Notes: generated from the sequence alone by a model not told the origin. Positions 577 through 8,352 are shown, counted from the stretch's first letter. The stretch is DNA of 64,000 nucleotides from Lytechinus pictus (GCF_037042905.1 NC_087246.1:61814001-61878000), one strand, 5' to 3'. Translations and numbers: made by a program.

Positions 577-888
<312 letters not shown>

Positions 889-1157
889 TCAAGCATCATA
901 TTTGCTGTGAGTTAAAGTCTTTTAGATACAATATTGATGTGTATCAAATTTCATCCTCAGTTTGAGGGTGGTTCTGACCTGGGGGGGATATTGCAGTTAT
1001 TTATTTGTGGTCATCCAATCCGTAATATCAATTTTACGACAGTGCAAACCCATTTCAGAGAAAATTGACTTCAAAGTTTACTATAATTTCCACACTTTGT
1101 TCCCCATCCTAACAACATTTTCATTGCTAGAAAAATACATGGTTAGAAAGACCGAGT

Positions 1158-1626
1158 CAATTCTCGCTACCCCAAATAGCGATTTCGCCGAGATCCGGGA
1201 AAATCCCTGTAACGCGCATTGCATTATGGGATAGCTTTTCGGTATTACAACTTCCTGATCGGAAGTCCAATGCACTGTTTTGCCATTCAGATCAACAGTG
1301 CCGTCATGCACAACAACACAACGTCGCTTTCGCTCGGAAAGTTCGTGATCACAACCCTCTCTTTCACATTTTCACGTGAAATATATTTTTTATTTCTATT
1401 TATAATTCAAATGGAATCAAAACTGACCAAATTAGATAAAACGTATTATAATCTGTACATATTACGCTGATTGGCATCGATTTCAGCGTGGTGGAAAACT
1501 CAGTATCGCGAACCTCGCGCGAGCATAACTCTGAACCGGAAGTGGTGATGACGACCCGACGAAGTGAAAATTATCTCGTCTCGCGCATTATGAGATTTTT
1601 GTTCCTATTTGGGGTAGCGAGAATTG
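1158..1626. mobile_element. MITE with 22-bp perfect TIRs
   Basis: caattctcgctaccccaaatag (1158) and ctatttggggtagcgagaattg (ends 1626) are exact reverse complements. No TSD recognised. Confidence 0.75.
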
Positions 1627-3076
1627 CTTGACGCTGGTATCTTTATTTTTTACACAATACCAAGAATCAGAGAAATATCGCTAAACAGCTACCTGCTTGT
1701 AATTTCAGTTTGAGTGGTTTAGATTTTCCCTGTACAAAAACACCATGGGGGATACAACAACCCTGACCGCAATTTCATTGCGCATCTGCGCGCGATCAAG
1801 CAAAACATAGCATTGCTCTTTCACGTCTACAAAAAATCTGGAGTGACAAAGGGCGTGTGTTTATGCTTCCACTTTTCAGGCCAGAATCAGCGTTTCCATG
1901 TGATTAGTCCACAGTTGCGTCCATGCTTACTTTCATTTAAACGACGTTTCAGAATGCCGATTGTAAACTCACAAAAAGATATGTTTCGAAACATCGTTTG
2001 ACCAGAATCAGGGTTTCTGGGGAAGTATAAACAGAAGTTACAGAACCACGATCATAATCGTGTTTAAATGACATCATTTGGTACATGCTTCCGGTGAGAT
2101 TAAAATCCGCGGGCAAAGACTTACCTCCACAGAATTACTTCTCATCTGACCAATGTACATTTGCATATACAATGTATGTGTGATTATTGATTTAAGTACT
2201 ATCACTACTTCTCCTTCTACTTACTACTTCTTCTTATTTGTCATTACGATGAATGTTGAGGGATTTACAACAAAAAAAAAACGGGAACATGAGTTCTGAT
2301 GAGGAGACATCACTGAGCCAGATCAGTAGCATGAAAAATAGATGTCTTATTATTTTCTTATGTATACTTTAAAATTCTTTATTTTGTCTCACTATTATTC
2401 AAACCATGGTGGAAATTCTATGGCTATGTCAAATAGCTCAATGCAATTACTAAAATATCGGAACTTGTTCGCTGTTTAAATAATAGTCGACCATAACAAC
2501 ACTCGGAAAAAGAAACTGTTGGATTAGGGCGAGCCCAATTTGACCTCACTTTCCTGCTCAACGAAAATTGCCATGAGATGCCAGCTGGAGATCGTGATTT
2601 CGCCTCTGAAACTGTACATTGTATAAACAGCACTCCCATTTTACGAATCAGTGGAATATTTTTCAATTTTTTCCCAAAATTCTTGGAATATTTTTGTTTT
2701 TTTCTGAGCGATCCAATATAATATAAATATTCATGCTGTTTGACCAGTGACCCTCGCATGCGATGTTTTGAAATCGGCCATGAATAATTATATGTGAGAA
2801 ATTAGATACTGGCCCAAAATCACACATTTTGAGGATAACAGGAGGATGGACACGGAGTGAAATAAGGGTGAAGAGTAAGAAATAAAACTATTTTTCTTTC
2901 TCGTTATATTTTTTTTCTATAATTTTTACAATAAACCACCATTTGATCCCACCTTTGTCACACGGTATATCCGAACTGGTTCACCGTCCCGATGTTCGGG
3001 CAGGTGGAGCGTAGTGTAGCGGTAGTGAAGTGGAGTGGAGCCTGCACGAACATCGCTCGAGGTAGAACGCGGGCTA

Positions 3077-3234
3077 AGTTGAAACATTGTAATTTTCTCT
3101 AACGCCTGTAAAATAAATTTATGCAATACTGCCCTCAATTTATTGCTATTAATAATACAACATTAATAGCAATAAATTGAGGGTATTGATAAATTTATTT
3201 TACAGGCGTTAAAGAAAATTACAATGTTTCAACT
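3077..3234. repeat. ~160-bp near-perfect palindrome (hairpin)
   Basis: agttgaaacattgtaattttc...cgcctgtaaaataaattt...ccctcaatttattgctattaat pairs with attaatagcaataaattgaggg...aaatttattttacaggcg...gaaaattacaatgtttcaact; loop of about 8 nt. Confidence 0.9.
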
Positions 3235-3632
3235 AACCCCCCCAATCGATCTCCCCTACCGGTTATCATAAGAATTGCGCATTCAAAGAATTTAGACAGT
3301 TATAAATATAACATTACTGAGGAGCTGAATCAAAGCTGTGAAATTTATTAGCACCACCATCGGGCTTCCTTTTATTTCCTTAAGAGACATGCGAAGTCAC
3401 TTTCCATGGCTGAGGTAAGCAAATTCGATCATTTTTTGTAGGATTTTTGGCATTATCGTGAAATTGGGAACCAGTTCCCAATTTCCAAAGGACACTTTTT
3501 CACGACAAGACATGACCTACCTACCTTTTCGAGCTTGTTCACTGCTTCACCGCAGCTGGCGCGCTGATTCTAGATAAAGTAATCCTTCAAAGAGCTTAGA
3601 TCAGAAAGATTGATTTCGTCGCCGTCTTTTCT

Positions 3633-4593
3633 CTACTCGCTAAAATGGGAACCAGCGTGGAAAACTTCCCATAGAGTTGTACACACTGGTTCCCATTTTA
3701 GCGAGTAGAGTAAACTAGTTTACTCTATTCGCTGAAATGGGAACCAGCGCGTAATAATAAGTTGTACACGCTGGTTCCCATTTCAGCGAGTAGATAAAGA
3801 CAGATTACTAGTGATATTTATTTCGTTAGTGATTATTCTCTGACGAAATAAAGCTGATTAATAAACTGTCTTTATCTACTCGTGAAAATGGGAACCATTA
3901 TAATTCAGGAGAATTTTCTTAGATGGTTCCCATTTTGAAGAGTAGATATAGAGAGAGAGAATGCCAATGAGATTTATTTCGTCAGTGATGATTCTGACGA
4001 AATAAATCTAAATCTAACAAATTGTCTTTATCTACTCGTTAAAATGGGAACCAACATGTATAATTCATGAGAATTTTCTTAGATGGTTCCCATTTTGGCG
4101 ATTAGATTTAATAAACTACTTTACTCTACTCGCCAAAATGGGAACCAGTGCGTACAACTCTATGGAAAACTCCCCATAGAGTTGTACACATGGTTCCCAT
4201 TTTAGCAAGTAGAGTAAACTAGTTTAATCTACTCGCCAAAATGGGAACCAGCGTGGAAAATTCTCAATAGAGTTGTACACGCTGGTTCCCATTTCAGCGA
4301 GTAGATAAAGACAGATTACTAGTAATATTTATTTCGTTAGTGATGATTCTCTGACGAAATAAATCTGATTAATAAACTGTCTTTATCTACTCGTGAAAAT
4401 GGGAACCAGCATTTATAATTCAGGAGAATTTTCTTAGATGGTTCCCATTTTGAAGAGTAGATATAGAGAGAGATTGCCAATGAGATTTATTTCATCAGTG
4501 ATGACTCTGACGAAATAAATTTCACTAGTAAACTGTCTTTATCTACTCGTGAAAATGGGAACCAGCTATGCTGGTTCCCATTTTCACGAGTAG
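3633..4593. repeat. Alternating inverted-repeat array (16 copies of ctactcgNNaaaatgggaacca or its reverse complement)
   Basis: Forward copies near 3633, 3725, 3876, 4032, 4126, 4229, 4387 and 4543; reverse copies near 3686, 3771, 3924, 4084, 4191, 4282, 4439 and 4571. There is a higher-order duplication with a ~511-bp offset. Confidence 0.92.
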
Positions 4594-5120
4594 ATAATAC
4601 AGTTTACTAAAGTGATTCATCCCCAGATATATCTTGTTTGTGATTTATTTAGTGAATCGATTTTGTAATATAAGTTTTTGTCAACATTGTGAAAGTGGCA
4701 GAGTGGTCTTGAAGAGCAGGGAAATGCGGGGTAGCCTAGATGGATAATTACAAAAATTATAATTCCGCGGAATCGTCGATGTCATCTGAAAACTTGTCCA
4801 CCCGTGGCAAACTGAGCCCGTTAAACATCGCATGAGGAAAGAGGTAACCAGTTGTGCGAGGAGCTTCGCATCGTAAACAAAGCCTCTCGCATCAATTCTT
4901 TTCAAAATCGCCGAAGCGAAGATTCTTTACATATCGTGGTGAAAGGAGGTACAAGTTCAATTTGGCTACCAGTTCCCAAAAGCACGGAATGGCCGGATTT
5001 TTATTTTCTAATAAAAAAAAAAAACGATTGTATTGCTACTCACCTGAAAAAGCACGGGTGAGTAGCGAGGTCGAGGAGTTTCGGCAAATATTACTTCTGA
5101 CTTTTCTGTAATAATGAAGC

Positions 5121-5360
5121 GACACAGAATCCCGACATCGAGGCACCAACTGCAACTGGACCCTCAAATAAAGGAAAAGTTAGACCTCCATGTCGCGTTC
5201 GTTCTCCATATCGATCGGCCATTTTTTGTTTTCAATTTTTTTGAAAGAACAAACAAGACACTAAAGTTAGACCATGAATGCATGATCATGATGTAGACAG
5301 AACTTTTCCTTCTTTTGATTTGAGGGTCCAGTTTGTGCCTCGATGACAGGATTCTGTGTC
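5121..5360. mobile_element. MITE-like inverted-repeat element
   Basis: gacacagaatcccgacatcgaggcac...actggaccctcaaat pairs with atttgagggtccagtttgtgcctcgatgacaggattctgtgtc. Confidence 0.75.
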
Positions 5361-5701
5361 ACAAATAGACCTTCATCCATATAATCGAGGGTAAGTGCAT
5401 AATTTATTTTTCCCCCTTTTATTTGGAGTGCTATTGCGACCCCATTCTACCCCATTTTGGAGAGCAAAAGTAATACACGAACGAGTCCTGGGCTCCGGCC
5501 TGCGAAGCGGGCCTGAGCTCCCTGGGTTAGCATACCACCAGTACCGTACCTTACCGGTACCTACCGGTAAGAAGCGACACACGTGAGCTGAGCCTGAGTC
5601 TGAGAGTGAGAAAGCGCTTTTGTAAGTAAAATTTCAACATTACAACACATGGTATATTTCTTTGTAATTAAATACGTCAAATAATTCAATGCTATACTTA
5701 C

Positions 5702-5733
5702 TGGAAAACGTGTTCAGAACTCCAAATCTTCAT
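5702..5733 (-). CDS. PRELID3: PRELID3-like coding exon 1 (MKIWSSEHVF-H)
   Basis: Minus strand reads ATG AAG ATT TGG AGT TCT GAA CAC GTT TTC CA|GTAAGT, matching the MKIW.SEHVF N-terminus of SLMO/PRELID3. It is 32 bp, phase 2, and joins exon 2 in frame (CA|C = His). Too short to appear in the ORF track. Confidence 0.93.
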
Positions 5734-7486: not shown

Positions 7487-8352
7487 TACTGTAGAAGCTG
7501 TTATTTTCGCGGGGGTTTTATTTTCGCGGATTTCGCGAATTGCCGATCGGCCGCGAATTTAACAACACGCGAAAATATTGACACATTTCTTAGTCAGTGC
7601 CAATGTCCCCAACAGCAAAGCTACACTGTAGAAAACTTCCTGTGCAATGAGAAAATGGAGATATGCACCTGTATATGTACAAAAAATAAGGCTTAGAAAG
7701 TACAGTTAGTGATTCAAAAAGTTAGCTAGAATTTCACTTTTTTGAATTTCTCAAACAAAATCAGAGCCTAAACTATTTTCTAATATTATTTAATCAATAT
7801 TTATACACTCTCTGTAATATCAAAATGTATTTTTCATGAAATAATTTGATTTTATTTTCATCTGATTGACTCTATACACACGTATTGGCAGCTATTTGCA
7901 TACTCATTAATATTCATAAGTCACATGACCAGAGCTTTTAGAGGTGAAGATTCTGTTCACAAAATTCCAAATTTTTACACTTTTATCAACTTTTTGAAAA
8001 ATGAATCGAACAAATCACAAATTTAAAAGATTGTTTAATCCTGTAGATTACAGATCAAATTGTGGCATGATGAATTTTCAGATCTAAAGGTAAAAAAAAG
8101 TGAAATTCAAGCCACCTTTTTCCACAGTTTGTAACTGTTTTTACAGGGACATATTTATGTACAAAAGACACATCAGCAAGGGTACTTAGAGGAGCATAAA
8201 TTTGCACGTAATTTGCACTAGTTATGCTTCTTAGAAATGCTGTAGAGATGTTTTGTACATCTTCCAATCGCGAATTTAACAACCCGCGAAAATGTCGGGA
8301 CCCCCGCAATTCGCGAAAAATTCTGTACGCGAAAATAACAGCTTGTACAGTA
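7487..8352. mobile_element. Tc1/mariner-type non-autonomous element (TA-flanked)
   Basis: TActgtagaagctgttattttcgcg ... cgcgaaaataacagcttgtacagTA, with repeated tttcgcg/cgcgaaa subterminal motifs. Confidence 0.8.

What the first reader, a model, noticed from the sequence alone, without database searches (positions are those of the whole stretch)
3633..4609. ~1 kb array of strictly alternating inverted repeats with palindromic spacers
Seen: a ~23-bp motif (ctactcg-NN-aaaatgggaacca) occurs 16 times in strict forward/reverse alternation. Several spacers are palindromic themselves (agtaaactagtttact; aaagacag...atttcg..ag...ctgacgaaat...ctgtcttt). The last unit is a near-perfect palindrome with arms of about 40 bp (4527-4609), and a block starting at 3761 recurs at 4272 (511-bp offset). 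Each motif can pair with either neighbour, giving two alternative ladders of hairpins of about 50-150 nt. Knowledge: this is unlike head-to-tail satellites or simple MITEs. It is architecturally closer to bacterial REP/BIME arrays, or to products of template-switch or rolling-hairpin replication. Inference: either the core of an uncharacterised fold-back element spanning roughly 2.9-5.1 kb, or an intronic hairpin-RNA/siRNA precursor transcribed with the PRELID3 pre-mRNA.
Basis: partly seen in the sequence, partly recalled or inferred. Interest (0 to 1): 0.75.

Follow-up and report, generated by a model that had tools for sequence, protein, structure and literature searches.

The report
Hairpin-array core of a Merlin transposon
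The alternating repeat array is real. It is the middle of an ordinary 1.5-kb non-coding jumping gene of the Merlin type, present in about 40 copies in this animal genome and sitting in the first intron of a PRELID3-like gene.

Summary
A 22-nt motif occurs 16 times at 3633-4593 in strict +/- alternation (0.01 expected by chance), with palindromic spacers, a 511-bp internal duplication and a terminal palindrome.

The array is not a free-standing structure. It is the core of a 1546-bp element (3449-4994) with imperfect 26-nt terminal inverted repeats and a perfect 8-bp target-site duplication (GGATTTTT). The 812-Mb genome holds about 40 dispersed copies. Eleven other insertions show their own 8-bp duplications, nine exact and two with one mismatch. 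Copies carry 4 to 9 hairpin pairs. None of the copies inspected encodes a transposase.

The element's ends match those of a 7.15-kb element on another chromosome. That element has an intact 489-aa Merlin (DDE_Tnp_IS1595) transposase and a perfect 8-bp duplication. The left 12 nt are identical, the right 12 nt match at 10 of 12, and the left/right asymmetry is the same. The two also share a 41-45-nt internal segment.

The array motif is a near-copy (18 of 19 nt) of the inner part of the element's own terminal repeat. I read the array as a tandemly amplified hairpin unit made from the end's binding-site palindrome. That it serves as extra transposase docking sites is inferred, not shown.

Two RNA-seq runs gave no reads over the array. 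Small RNAs and long reads were not testable.

Verdict: a new member of a known kind, of low to moderate interest. Unchecked notes from this scan describe other Merlin-type and foldback elements elsewhere in this genome.

The parts
3441..3448 (.). Left copy of the 8-bp target-site duplication (GGATTTTT)
   Evidence: Identical 8-mer directly outside both ends. Eleven other insertions have their own 8-bp duplications.
3449..3474 (+). Left terminal inverted repeat, starting GGCATTATCGTG. The inner part (TCGTGAAATTGGGAACCAG) is the prototype of the array motif.
   Evidence: Homology with other copies starts sharply here. 60 genome matches at up to 3 mismatches against 0 for the reversed control. 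The first 12 nt are identical to the left end of the Merlin element L043:1098-8250.
3461..3487 (.). Tight palindrome at the left end (TTGGGAAC-CA-GTTCCCAA core): two inverted copies of the GGGAAC site
   Evidence: Read from the sequence. Listed as D10.
3475..3632 (+). Left non-array arm of the element
   Evidence: 41 genome matches to 3449-3632, at 73-100% identity.
3633..4593 (.). Array of 16 motif copies forming 8 hairpin modules (+ arm, loop, - arm) separated by palindromic spacers. There are two unit classes, with periods 92-107 bp and 151-160 bp.
   Evidence: Other copies hold 4-9 modules; motif order alternates strictly in the intact copies.
3760..3897 (+). Block duplicated at 4271-4408 (98% identity, offset 511 bp): a higher-order duplication inside the array
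   Evidence: family D2.
4527..4609 (.). Last module: near-perfect palindrome with a 7-nt loop
4610..4968 (+). Right non-array arm of the element
   Evidence: 43 genome matches to 4610-4994, at 68-100% identity.
4690..4734 (+). 41-45-nt segment shared with the subterminal 157-bp tandem repeats of Merlin transposase-encoding elements and with other non-coding elements
   Evidence: 90% identity to 11 places in L043, 90-93% to 3 places in L039, 96% to both arms of L044. 276 first-look candidates genome-wide.
4969..4994 (-). Right terminal inverted repeat (reads GGCCATTCCGTG... inward on the minus strand)
   Evidence: Sharp shared boundary. 27 genome matches against 0 for the control. 10 of 12 terminal nt match the right end of the Merlin element in L043.
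4995..5002 (.). Right copy of the 8-bp target-site duplication (GGATTTTT)
5702..5733 (-). Context: first coding exon of the PRELID3-like host gene (MKIWSSEHVF...), followed by a GTAAGT splice donor
586..754 (-). Context: second coding exon of the host gene (start of the PRELI domain). Intron 1 is therefore 755-5701 and contains the element.
   Evidence: Pfam PF04707 PRELI, 69.6 bits. Splice sites read.

Best explanation
Window 3449-4994 is one copy of a non-autonomous DNA transposon of the Merlin superfamily, inserted in intron 1 of a PRELID3-like gene. A Merlin DDE transposase supplied by another element moves it by cut-and-paste. The transposase recognises the asymmetric ends (GGCATTATCGTG... 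on the left, GGCCAT.CGTG... on the right) and duplicates 8 bp of target on insertion. The roughly 1-kb array is the element's own end-proximal palindrome (two inverted GGGAACC sites). That palindrome was turned into a hairpin unit and amplified in tandem, which is why the motif alternates strictly in orientation. Unit number then drifts between copies (4 to 9 pairs), probably by slippage or unequal exchange between the palindromic units. The most likely role of the repeated motif is to provide extra docking sites for the transposase's DNA-binding domain, helping a non-coding element compete for enzyme. Shown: the element's boundaries, target duplications, copy family, lack of coding capacity, the end match to a transposase-encoding Merlin, and the identity of the array motif with the inner terminal repeat. 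Inferred: that the transposase binds the array motif, and that the array helps transposition.
For: Boundaries and duplications: homology with other loci begins at 3447-3449 and ends at 4994-4995. GGATTTTT flanks both ends, and eleven other insertions have their own 8-bp duplications, nine exact and two with one mismatch. Family: 165 array matches at several dozen loci, 60 left-end and 27 right-end matches against 0 controls, 41-43 matches to the arms at 68-100% identity. No transposase-like open frame was found in 15 inspected loci. Merlin link: L043:1098-8250 is a 7153-bp element with a perfect 8-bp duplication (TGGTTCTT) and a 489-aa ORF matching PF12762 DDE_Tnp_IS1595 at 80 bits. Its left 12 nt are identical to the window element's, its right 12 nt match at 10 of 12, and the left/right asymmetry is the same. 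The two also share a 41-45-nt segment and a roughly 30-nt stretch of the array (score 39 against 22 +/- 2.3 for shuffles). The Merlin definition of 5'-GG ends, 24-462-bp terminal repeats and 8-9-bp duplications is taken from PMC8101967. Motif equals end: array variants TCGTGAAAATGGGAACCAG match the terminal repeat TCGTGAAATTGGGAACCAG at 18 of 19 (D6). Across 167 instances in 11 copies the motif is highly conserved while the NN positions, loops and spacers vary. Diverged copies keep it too. A 150-bp relative has the same ends and the same GGGAACC...GGTTCCC pair.
Against: No transposase-encoding element with the GGGAACC inner site was found. The intact Merlin in L043 has no GGGAACC at all; its inner terminal site is a different palindrome (CTCCGGAG). 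The true partner enzyme may therefore be another Merlin lineage, possibly extinct or not sampled, and binding of any transposase to the array motif is untested. The terminal repeats are quite imperfect (17 of 26 ungapped). Genome searches score only the best candidates, so copy counts are lower bounds and absence of an autonomous copy is not proven. No long reads were available to confirm this particular copy's array length.
Confidence: 0.82

Rival explanations
1. Same transposon, but the array has no role in transposition. It is a neutral by-product of palindrome-driven replication slippage or template switching, which expands and contracts hairpin units. Only the terminal 12-26 nt matter to the enzyme.
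For: Unit number varies from 4 to 9 pairs among otherwise similar copies, and copies with only 4-5 pairs still carry target duplications. The only intact Merlin with matching ends lacks the GGGAACC motif. There is a recent 98% internal duplication. Tandem repeats with palindromes inside small inverted-repeat transposons are reported as length-variation hotspots in PMC3879986.
Against: The 22-nt motif is much better conserved than the loops and spacers across 167 instances and in diverged copies. It equals the inner terminal repeat (D6). The related 150-bp family keeps the same inverted site pair. Concerted evolution could mimic this conservation.
Confidence: 0.3
2. The intronic array is transcribed with the PRELID3-like pre-mRNA and folds into long hairpins that are diced into small RNAs. 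Those would act as a silencer of this transposon family or as a regulator of the host gene.
For: The element lies in intron 1 of an apparently intact gene. Predicted stems are long and very stable. Sub-threshold resemblance to generic miRNA-precursor hairpins.
Against: Zero RNA-seq depth over 3338-5250 in two runs. All Rfam matches are far below gathering scores and come from unrelated taxa. The same array sits at about 40 unrelated loci, so its structure is explained by the transposon and not by this gene. Small RNAs were not tested.
Confidence: 0.08
3. The element belongs to another 8-bp-duplication superfamily (hAT, P, or the sea-urchin TU/Foldback group), not to Merlin.
For: An 8-bp duplication alone does not discriminate between these. 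The hairpin-rich interior recalls foldback elements. Sea-urchin TU elements are, from my memory of the 1980s literature, modular with 8-bp duplications.
Against: The ends start with GG, not the YARNG of hAT or the CATG of P (general knowledge of those families). The 12 terminal nt are shared with a DDE_Tnp_IS1595-encoding element that has its own 8-bp duplication. There are no long inverted arms; the terminal repeats are about 26 nt.
Confidence: 0.05
4. The array is an assembly artefact (collapsed or folded-back reads).
For: No long read or contig spans the stretch in the runs available; short contigs are fragmented across it.
Against: Eleven distinct full-length copies at different loci show the same motif order, and the intact ones alternate strictly. 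They have their own flanks, and most of those checked have 8-bp duplications. Short contigs from two independent studies tile most of the array at 95-100% identity, though these could derive from other copies of the family.
Confidence: 0.02

Closest known systems
Merlin superfamily DNA transposons (eukaryotic relatives of the IS1595/IS1016 insertion sequences), non-autonomous derivatives
   Same: 5'-GG termini, 8-bp target duplication, imperfect terminal repeats of about 26 nt, and end sequence shared with a DDE_Tnp_IS1595-encoding element in the same genome. Tandem repeats inside Merlin copies and strongly imperfect terminal repeats are both reported in PMC8101967.
   Different: No transposase is encoded. 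The interior is almost entirely an array of hairpin units built from the inner terminal-repeat site. The inner site (GGGAACC palindrome) differs from that of the only intact Merlin found with matching ends.
Foldback-like transposons whose terminal repeats contain tandem repeats (Drosophila FB, Galileo, Tetris; sea-urchin TU elements)
   Same: Non-coding copies, variable numbers of internal tandem repeats derived from or resembling the end sequence, and proposed extra transposase-binding sites (PMC4079207).
   Different: Those have two long inverted arms. Here the repeats form a single central run of local hairpins between short terminal repeats. The superfamily also differs (FB is Mutator-like, Galileo is P).
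Subterminal repeat regions of En/Spm (CACTA) and Ac/Ds elements
   Same: A short binding motif repeated many times in both orientations near the ends, including tail-to-tail pairs (general knowledge of these systems). This is the best functional analogy.
   Different: Different superfamilies, motifs and duplication sizes. Those motifs are scattered in subterminal regions rather than arranged as a regular tandem hairpin array.
Tandem-repeat-containing small inverted-repeat transposons (MITEs) of marine invertebrates (DTC84 in Donax, the pearl family)
   Same: A cassette of flanking modules around a variable-number core repeat array, with palindromes as likely hotspots of length change (PMC3879986).
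   Different: Those core repeats are head-to-tail without inverted pairs, and the elements lack this kind of terminal repeat and 8-bp duplication.
Bacterial REP/BIME arrays
   Same: Alternating orientation of a short palindromic unit with defined spacers.
   Different: Bacterial, extragenic, bound by gyrase/IHF and mobilised by RAYT enzymes. There is no homology, and the context here is a eukaryotic transposon.

Membership tests
Merlin superfamily (as a non-autonomous member) | 8- or 9-bp target-site duplication | tested here: met
   GGATTTTT on both sides of 3449-4994. Eleven other copies have 8-bp duplications, nine exact and two with one mismatch.
Merlin superfamily (as a non-autonomous member) | Terminal inverted repeats with conserved terminal 5'-GG (24-462 bp, per PMC8101967) | tested here: met
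   Both ends start with GGC. The repeats are about 26 nt and imperfect, 17 of 26 ungapped.
Merlin superfamily (as a non-autonomous member) | Encodes, or shares its ends with an element that encodes, a DDE_Tnp_IS1595 transposase | tested here: met
   Nothing is encoded in the copies inspected. L043:1098-8250 has a 489-aa PF12762 ORF, its own 8-bp duplication, an identical 12-nt left end and a 10-of-12 right end.
Merlin superfamily (as a non-autonomous member) | Actual mobilisation by a Merlin transposase | not testable with these tools
   Needs a transposition or binding assay. The inner terminal site differs from that of the intact Merlin found.
Foldback elements | Two long terminal inverted arms, built of tandem repeats, that make up most of the element | tested here: not met
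   The terminal repeats are about 26 nt. The left arm (3475-3632) and right arm (4610-4968) are unrelated. The array is a central run of local hairpins.
hAT superfamily | 8-bp duplication plus short terminal repeats beginning YARNG; hAT transposase | tested here: not met
   The duplication size fits, but the ends begin GGCAT/GGCCA and no hAT ORF lies in any copy inspected. The terminal consensus is from general knowledge.
Hairpin-RNA / endogenous siRNA locus | Transcription of the inverted repeats and production of small RNAs from the stems | tested here: inconclusive
   Zero depth in two RNA-seq runs, each about 25% read. No small-RNA data were available.
Known RNA families (Rfam 15) | Match at or above the family's gathering score | tested here: not met
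   The best array match scores 45 bits against a gathering score of 80. All are generic hairpin look-alikes.

The most novel reading that the evidence does not exclude
The intronic array is a double agent. As DNA, it is a multi-site trap for a Merlin transposase. As part of the PRELID3-like pre-mRNA, it folds into perfect 25-40-bp stems that are diced into small RNAs matching the end-proximal site of every family member. One intronic copy would then act as a natural silencer of the family, in the way the maize Mu killer locus does.
Probability: 0.07. Interest if true: 0.6.

Novelty: new member of a known kind. Interest (0 to 1): 0.27.

Why it matters
It removes a puzzling structure from the list of unknowns: the alternating repeat ladder is the normal anatomy of one transposon family, not a new class of element or an RNA gene. 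It has modest value as a clean example of two things. A non-coding Merlin derivative multiplies its own end-proximal site into a hairpin array. And a set of families in one genome (the 1.5-kb element, a 150-bp miniature relative and a 7.15-kb transposase-bearing element) keeps the same 12-nt asymmetric ends while swapping the inner site. That points to separate cleavage-site and docking-site recognition in Merlin transposases, whose DNA binding has, to my knowledge, hardly been studied. The long perfect palindromes in an intron may also matter locally as sites of replication fragility.

Tried and rejected
1. Looking for a transposase inside the longer family copies and related pairs (L031, L032, L037, L038, L041, L042, L044 and others) found only low-complexity frames. 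L031 has a nested 1.2-kb insert whose 216-aa frame has no Pfam hit.

2. Cross-referencing 60 left-end matches with 53 Merlin-domain hits gave a single near-coincidence, on C2 at 29.23 Mb. It turned out to be a solo end of a miniature relative, about 400 bp from a broken Merlin, and not that Merlin's own end.

3. I first took the inverted arrays (L043:1355 and 7950) as the termini of the intact Merlin and found no duplication there. Comparison with a second copy (L045) moved the true left end out to 1098, which led to the right end at 8250, where the match to the window element appears.

4. A contig joint 3373 to 5079 in run X2 was considered as a possible empty-site allele. It was rejected because it is not at the duplication and has only 21 nt on one side.

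5. Rfam gave only sub-threshold hairpin look-alikes.

6. A sequence look-up in the scan's notes returned nothing.

As a result only a few Merlin loci could be read.

8. The old sea-urchin transposon paper PMC367019 is not held.

Full report
OBSERVATION. CTACTCG-NN-AAAATGGGAACCA (up to 3 mismatches) matches 16 times in the window. All matches lie between 3633 and 4593 and alternate strictly in strand. Shuffles of the window give 0.01 matches on average.

Parsing the array gives eight convergent pairs, each made of a + arm, a loop of 7-43 nt and a - arm. Seven divergent spacers separate them. The spacer at 3709-3724 is a perfect 16-nt palindrome. The 82-nt spacers at 3794-3875 and 4305-4386 are each 32/41 self-complementary.

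The block 3760-3897 recurs at 4271-4408 at 98% identity (D2). The last module, at about 4527-4609, is a near-perfect palindrome. As single-stranded DNA, 3619-4612 folds at -311 kcal/mol against -90 +/- 4 for shuffles.

Tandem Repeats Finder and the repeat finder give start-to-start spacings of 92-107 bp and 151-160 bp. The simplest description is therefore a tandem array of a unit that contains one inverted motif pair. Strict alternation follows from that automatically.

BOUNDARIES. The array is present at several dozen other places in the window's own 812-Mb assembly (165 matches). When window 3000-5200 is compared with 30 of those loci, homology starts at 3447-3449 and stops at 4994-4995 in locus after locus.

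The element is thus 3449-4994, 1546 bp. Its left end reads GGCATTATCGTGAAATTGGGAACCAG. The reverse complement of its right end reads GGCCATTCCGTGCTTTTGGGAACTGG. It is flanked by GGATTTTT on both sides (3441-3448 and 4995-5002).

Eleven other insertions have their own, different, 8-bp direct duplications. Nine are exact and two have one mismatch. That settles that this is a cut-and-paste DNA transposon and that the array is its interior.

FAMILY. The left end has 60 genome matches at up to 3 mismatches and the right end has 27. The reversed control patterns have none. The non-array arms give 41-43 matches at 68-100% identity, so there are young and old subfamilies.

Paired ends give copy lengths of 1046-1737 bp, plus longer copies of 2.5-4.7 kb. 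In the one longer copy I resolved (L031), the extra length is a nested 1.2-kb insert.

Eleven distinct full copies were parsed. The motif string is always the terminal repeat followed by (+-) repeated 4 to 9 times. Alternation is strict in all copies except L032, which carries a large foreign insert. More diverged copies keep the motif and mostly keep the alternation. This recurrence at independent loci makes an assembly artefact very unlikely.

No transposase-like open frame was found in the 15 loci inspected. A 137-164-bp miniature relative has ends GGCATTATCGTGATATTGGGAAC and GGCCAAATCGTGGTTTCGGGAAC and the same GGGAACC...GGTTCCC pair.

SUPERFAMILY. An 8-bp duplication with GG termini is the published signature of Merlin (PMC8101967). 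The genome has at least 53 DDE_Tnp_IS1595 hits.

One of them, L043 (C7:36253800-36263300), carries an uninterrupted 489-aa ORF that matches PF12762 at 80 bits. Comparison with a second copy (L045) showed that this element begins at L043:1098. The sequence there reads GGCATTATCGTGCTTTCTGACTCCGGAG. The other end, at 8250, reads GGCCATATCGTGAATGCTGACTCCGGAG when reverse-complemented. Both ends are flanked by a perfect TGGTTCTT.

The transposase-bearing 7153-bp element and the window's element therefore share three end features. The first 12 nt of the left end are identical, the right end matches at 10 of 12, and the peculiar left/right asymmetry (GGCATTA against GGCCAT) is the same.

They also share sequence internally. 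A 41-45-nt segment (window 4690-4734) sits once in each 157-bp subterminal tandem repeat of the Merlin, at 11 places and about 90% identity. About 30 nt of the array's long spacer also match, at alignment score 39 against 22 +/- 2.3 for shuffles.

A broken Merlin on C2 (L039/L040) carries a hairpin module of the same design: arms ending in ACCAGC, and a loop containing TGTACA and CCCATAG. A non-coding long-armed element, L044, shares the loop palindrome of window 4149-4190.

I therefore file the element as a non-autonomous Merlin. The alternatives are hAT, P and foldback/TU. They fit the duplication size but not the ends, and none is linked to the element by sequence.

WHAT THE ARRAY IS AND HOW IT LIKELY WORKS. 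The array motif is the inner half of the element's own terminal repeat. TCGTGAAATTGGGAACCAG at the end compares with TCGTGAAAATGGGAACCAG in units 3, 7 and 8, an 18-of-19 match (D6).

The left end itself already carries a tight palindrome, TTGGGAAC-CA-GTTCCCAA. The last array module is the same palindrome with a 7-nt loop. Across 167 motif instances from 11 copies, TCTACTCG and AAAATGGGAACCAG are almost invariant, while the two N positions, the loops and the spacers vary.

The intact Merlin shows the same logic with a different word. Its inner terminal site contains the palindrome CTCCGGAG, and a related T-rich ...ACTCC word recurs in each subterminal repeat and in a terminal hairpin. The match there is only about 11 of 16, so this is weak.

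My reading is that the terminal 12 nt are the shared cleavage and recognition end. The inner palindrome would be a docking site for a dimeric DNA-binding domain. The non-coding element has multiplied that docking site into a hairpin array, which also makes it prone to gain and loss of units.

The first two sentences of that reading rest on sequence comparison. The binding and any benefit for transposition are inference by analogy with En/Spm, Ac/Ds and Galileo (PMC4079207).

The main caveat is that the intact Merlin has no GGGAACC at all. No transposase gene bounded by GGGAACC-type ends was found. The enzyme that fits this family's inner site may belong to a lineage that is lost or that I did not sample.

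GENE CONTEXT AND RNA. On the minus strand, ATG AAG ATT TGG... (MKIWSSEHVF) at 5733-5702 is followed by GTAAGT. An acceptor at 755/754 opens an exon (754-586) that matches the start of Pfam PRELI at 69.6 bits.

Two paired-end RNA-seq runs of the same species label, each about 25% read, gave no read over 3338-5250. This does not support a hairpin-RNA precursor. It is a weak test, because no exon was in the stretch laid and small RNAs were not covered.

Rfam matches in the array are all well below gathering scores. The DNA runs available are short-read contigs that tile the array in pieces at 95-100% identity but cannot span it.

SURROUNDINGS. The first is a 170-bp near-perfect palindromic element at 3071-3240, with extremely high word depth in DNA runs and RNA reads that continue into other copies. 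The second is the Merlin derivative at 3449-4994. The third is a 240-bp palindromic element at 5121-5360.

STATUS. Earlier notes from this scan are unchecked AI notes. They call this genome the sea urchin Lytechinus pictus and describe other Merlin-type non-coding and foldback-like elements elsewhere in it. I did not verify the species. The notes agree with my conclusion but did not produce it.

The finding is a real and neatly structured member of a known kind of element. It is not a new kind of element or an RNA gene.

Noticed in passing
window 3071-3240: A 170-bp near-perfect palindromic element (52-nt outer arms at 94%, and an inner 39-nt pair). Word depth in two DNA runs is about 70,000, and many RNA-seq reads continue into unlike sequence, so it is a very abundant, transcribed hairpin repeat. 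Rfam gives only sub-threshold plant miRNA look-alikes (81 bits against a gathering score of 144).
   Followed up: partly
window 5121-5360: A second small palindromic element, about 240 bp with arms at 91-95%, in the same intron. Word depth is about 2,300-2,800, so it is also a dispersed repeat.
   Followed up: no
L043:1098-8250 (G000 C7:36254897-36262049): An apparently intact 7153-bp Merlin element with a perfect 8-bp duplication and a 489-aa transposase ORF. It has inverted subterminal arrays of 157-bp tandem repeats (about 790 bp on the left, about 1300 bp on the right) and an approximately 170-205-bp terminal hairpin just inside each end. Its left end has 11 genome matches.
   Followed up: partly
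window 4690-4734; L043, L039, L044, L045: A 41-45-nt word beginning AAAGTGGCAGAGTGG is shared at 90-96% identity by several otherwise different element families, with 276 first-look candidates genome-wide. It occurs once per 157-bp unit in Merlin subterminal arrays. Its role (second binding site, promoter or other) is unknown.
   Followed up: partly
L036:101-253 and about 10 other loci (e.g. G000 C8:10744243-10744394): A 137-164-bp miniature element family with the same 12-nt asymmetric ends and a single GGGAACC...GGTTCCC pair. A few pairs of these ends lie 1.5-3.3 kb apart and enclose non-coding DNA.
   Followed up: partly
L031:3271-4506 (G000 C5): One family copy is split by a 1.2-kb insert carrying a 216-271-aa open frame. 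By eye it resembles a GIY-YIG-type retroelement endonuclease, but it has no Pfam hit at E 0.01.
   Followed up: partly
window 4681-4905 (minus strand); L031:5045-5293; L032:3705-3956: A 74-83-aa open frame in the right arm is kept in several copies. This is most likely chance, given 96-98% DNA identity; it was not tested for coding constraint.
   Followed up: no
L039:2695-2719 (G000 C2, about 29.2317 Mb): A solo miniature-type element end lies about 400 bp from the left repeats of a broken Merlin (transposase frame interrupted by a TGA). No partner end was found within 2.7 kb.
   Followed up: partly
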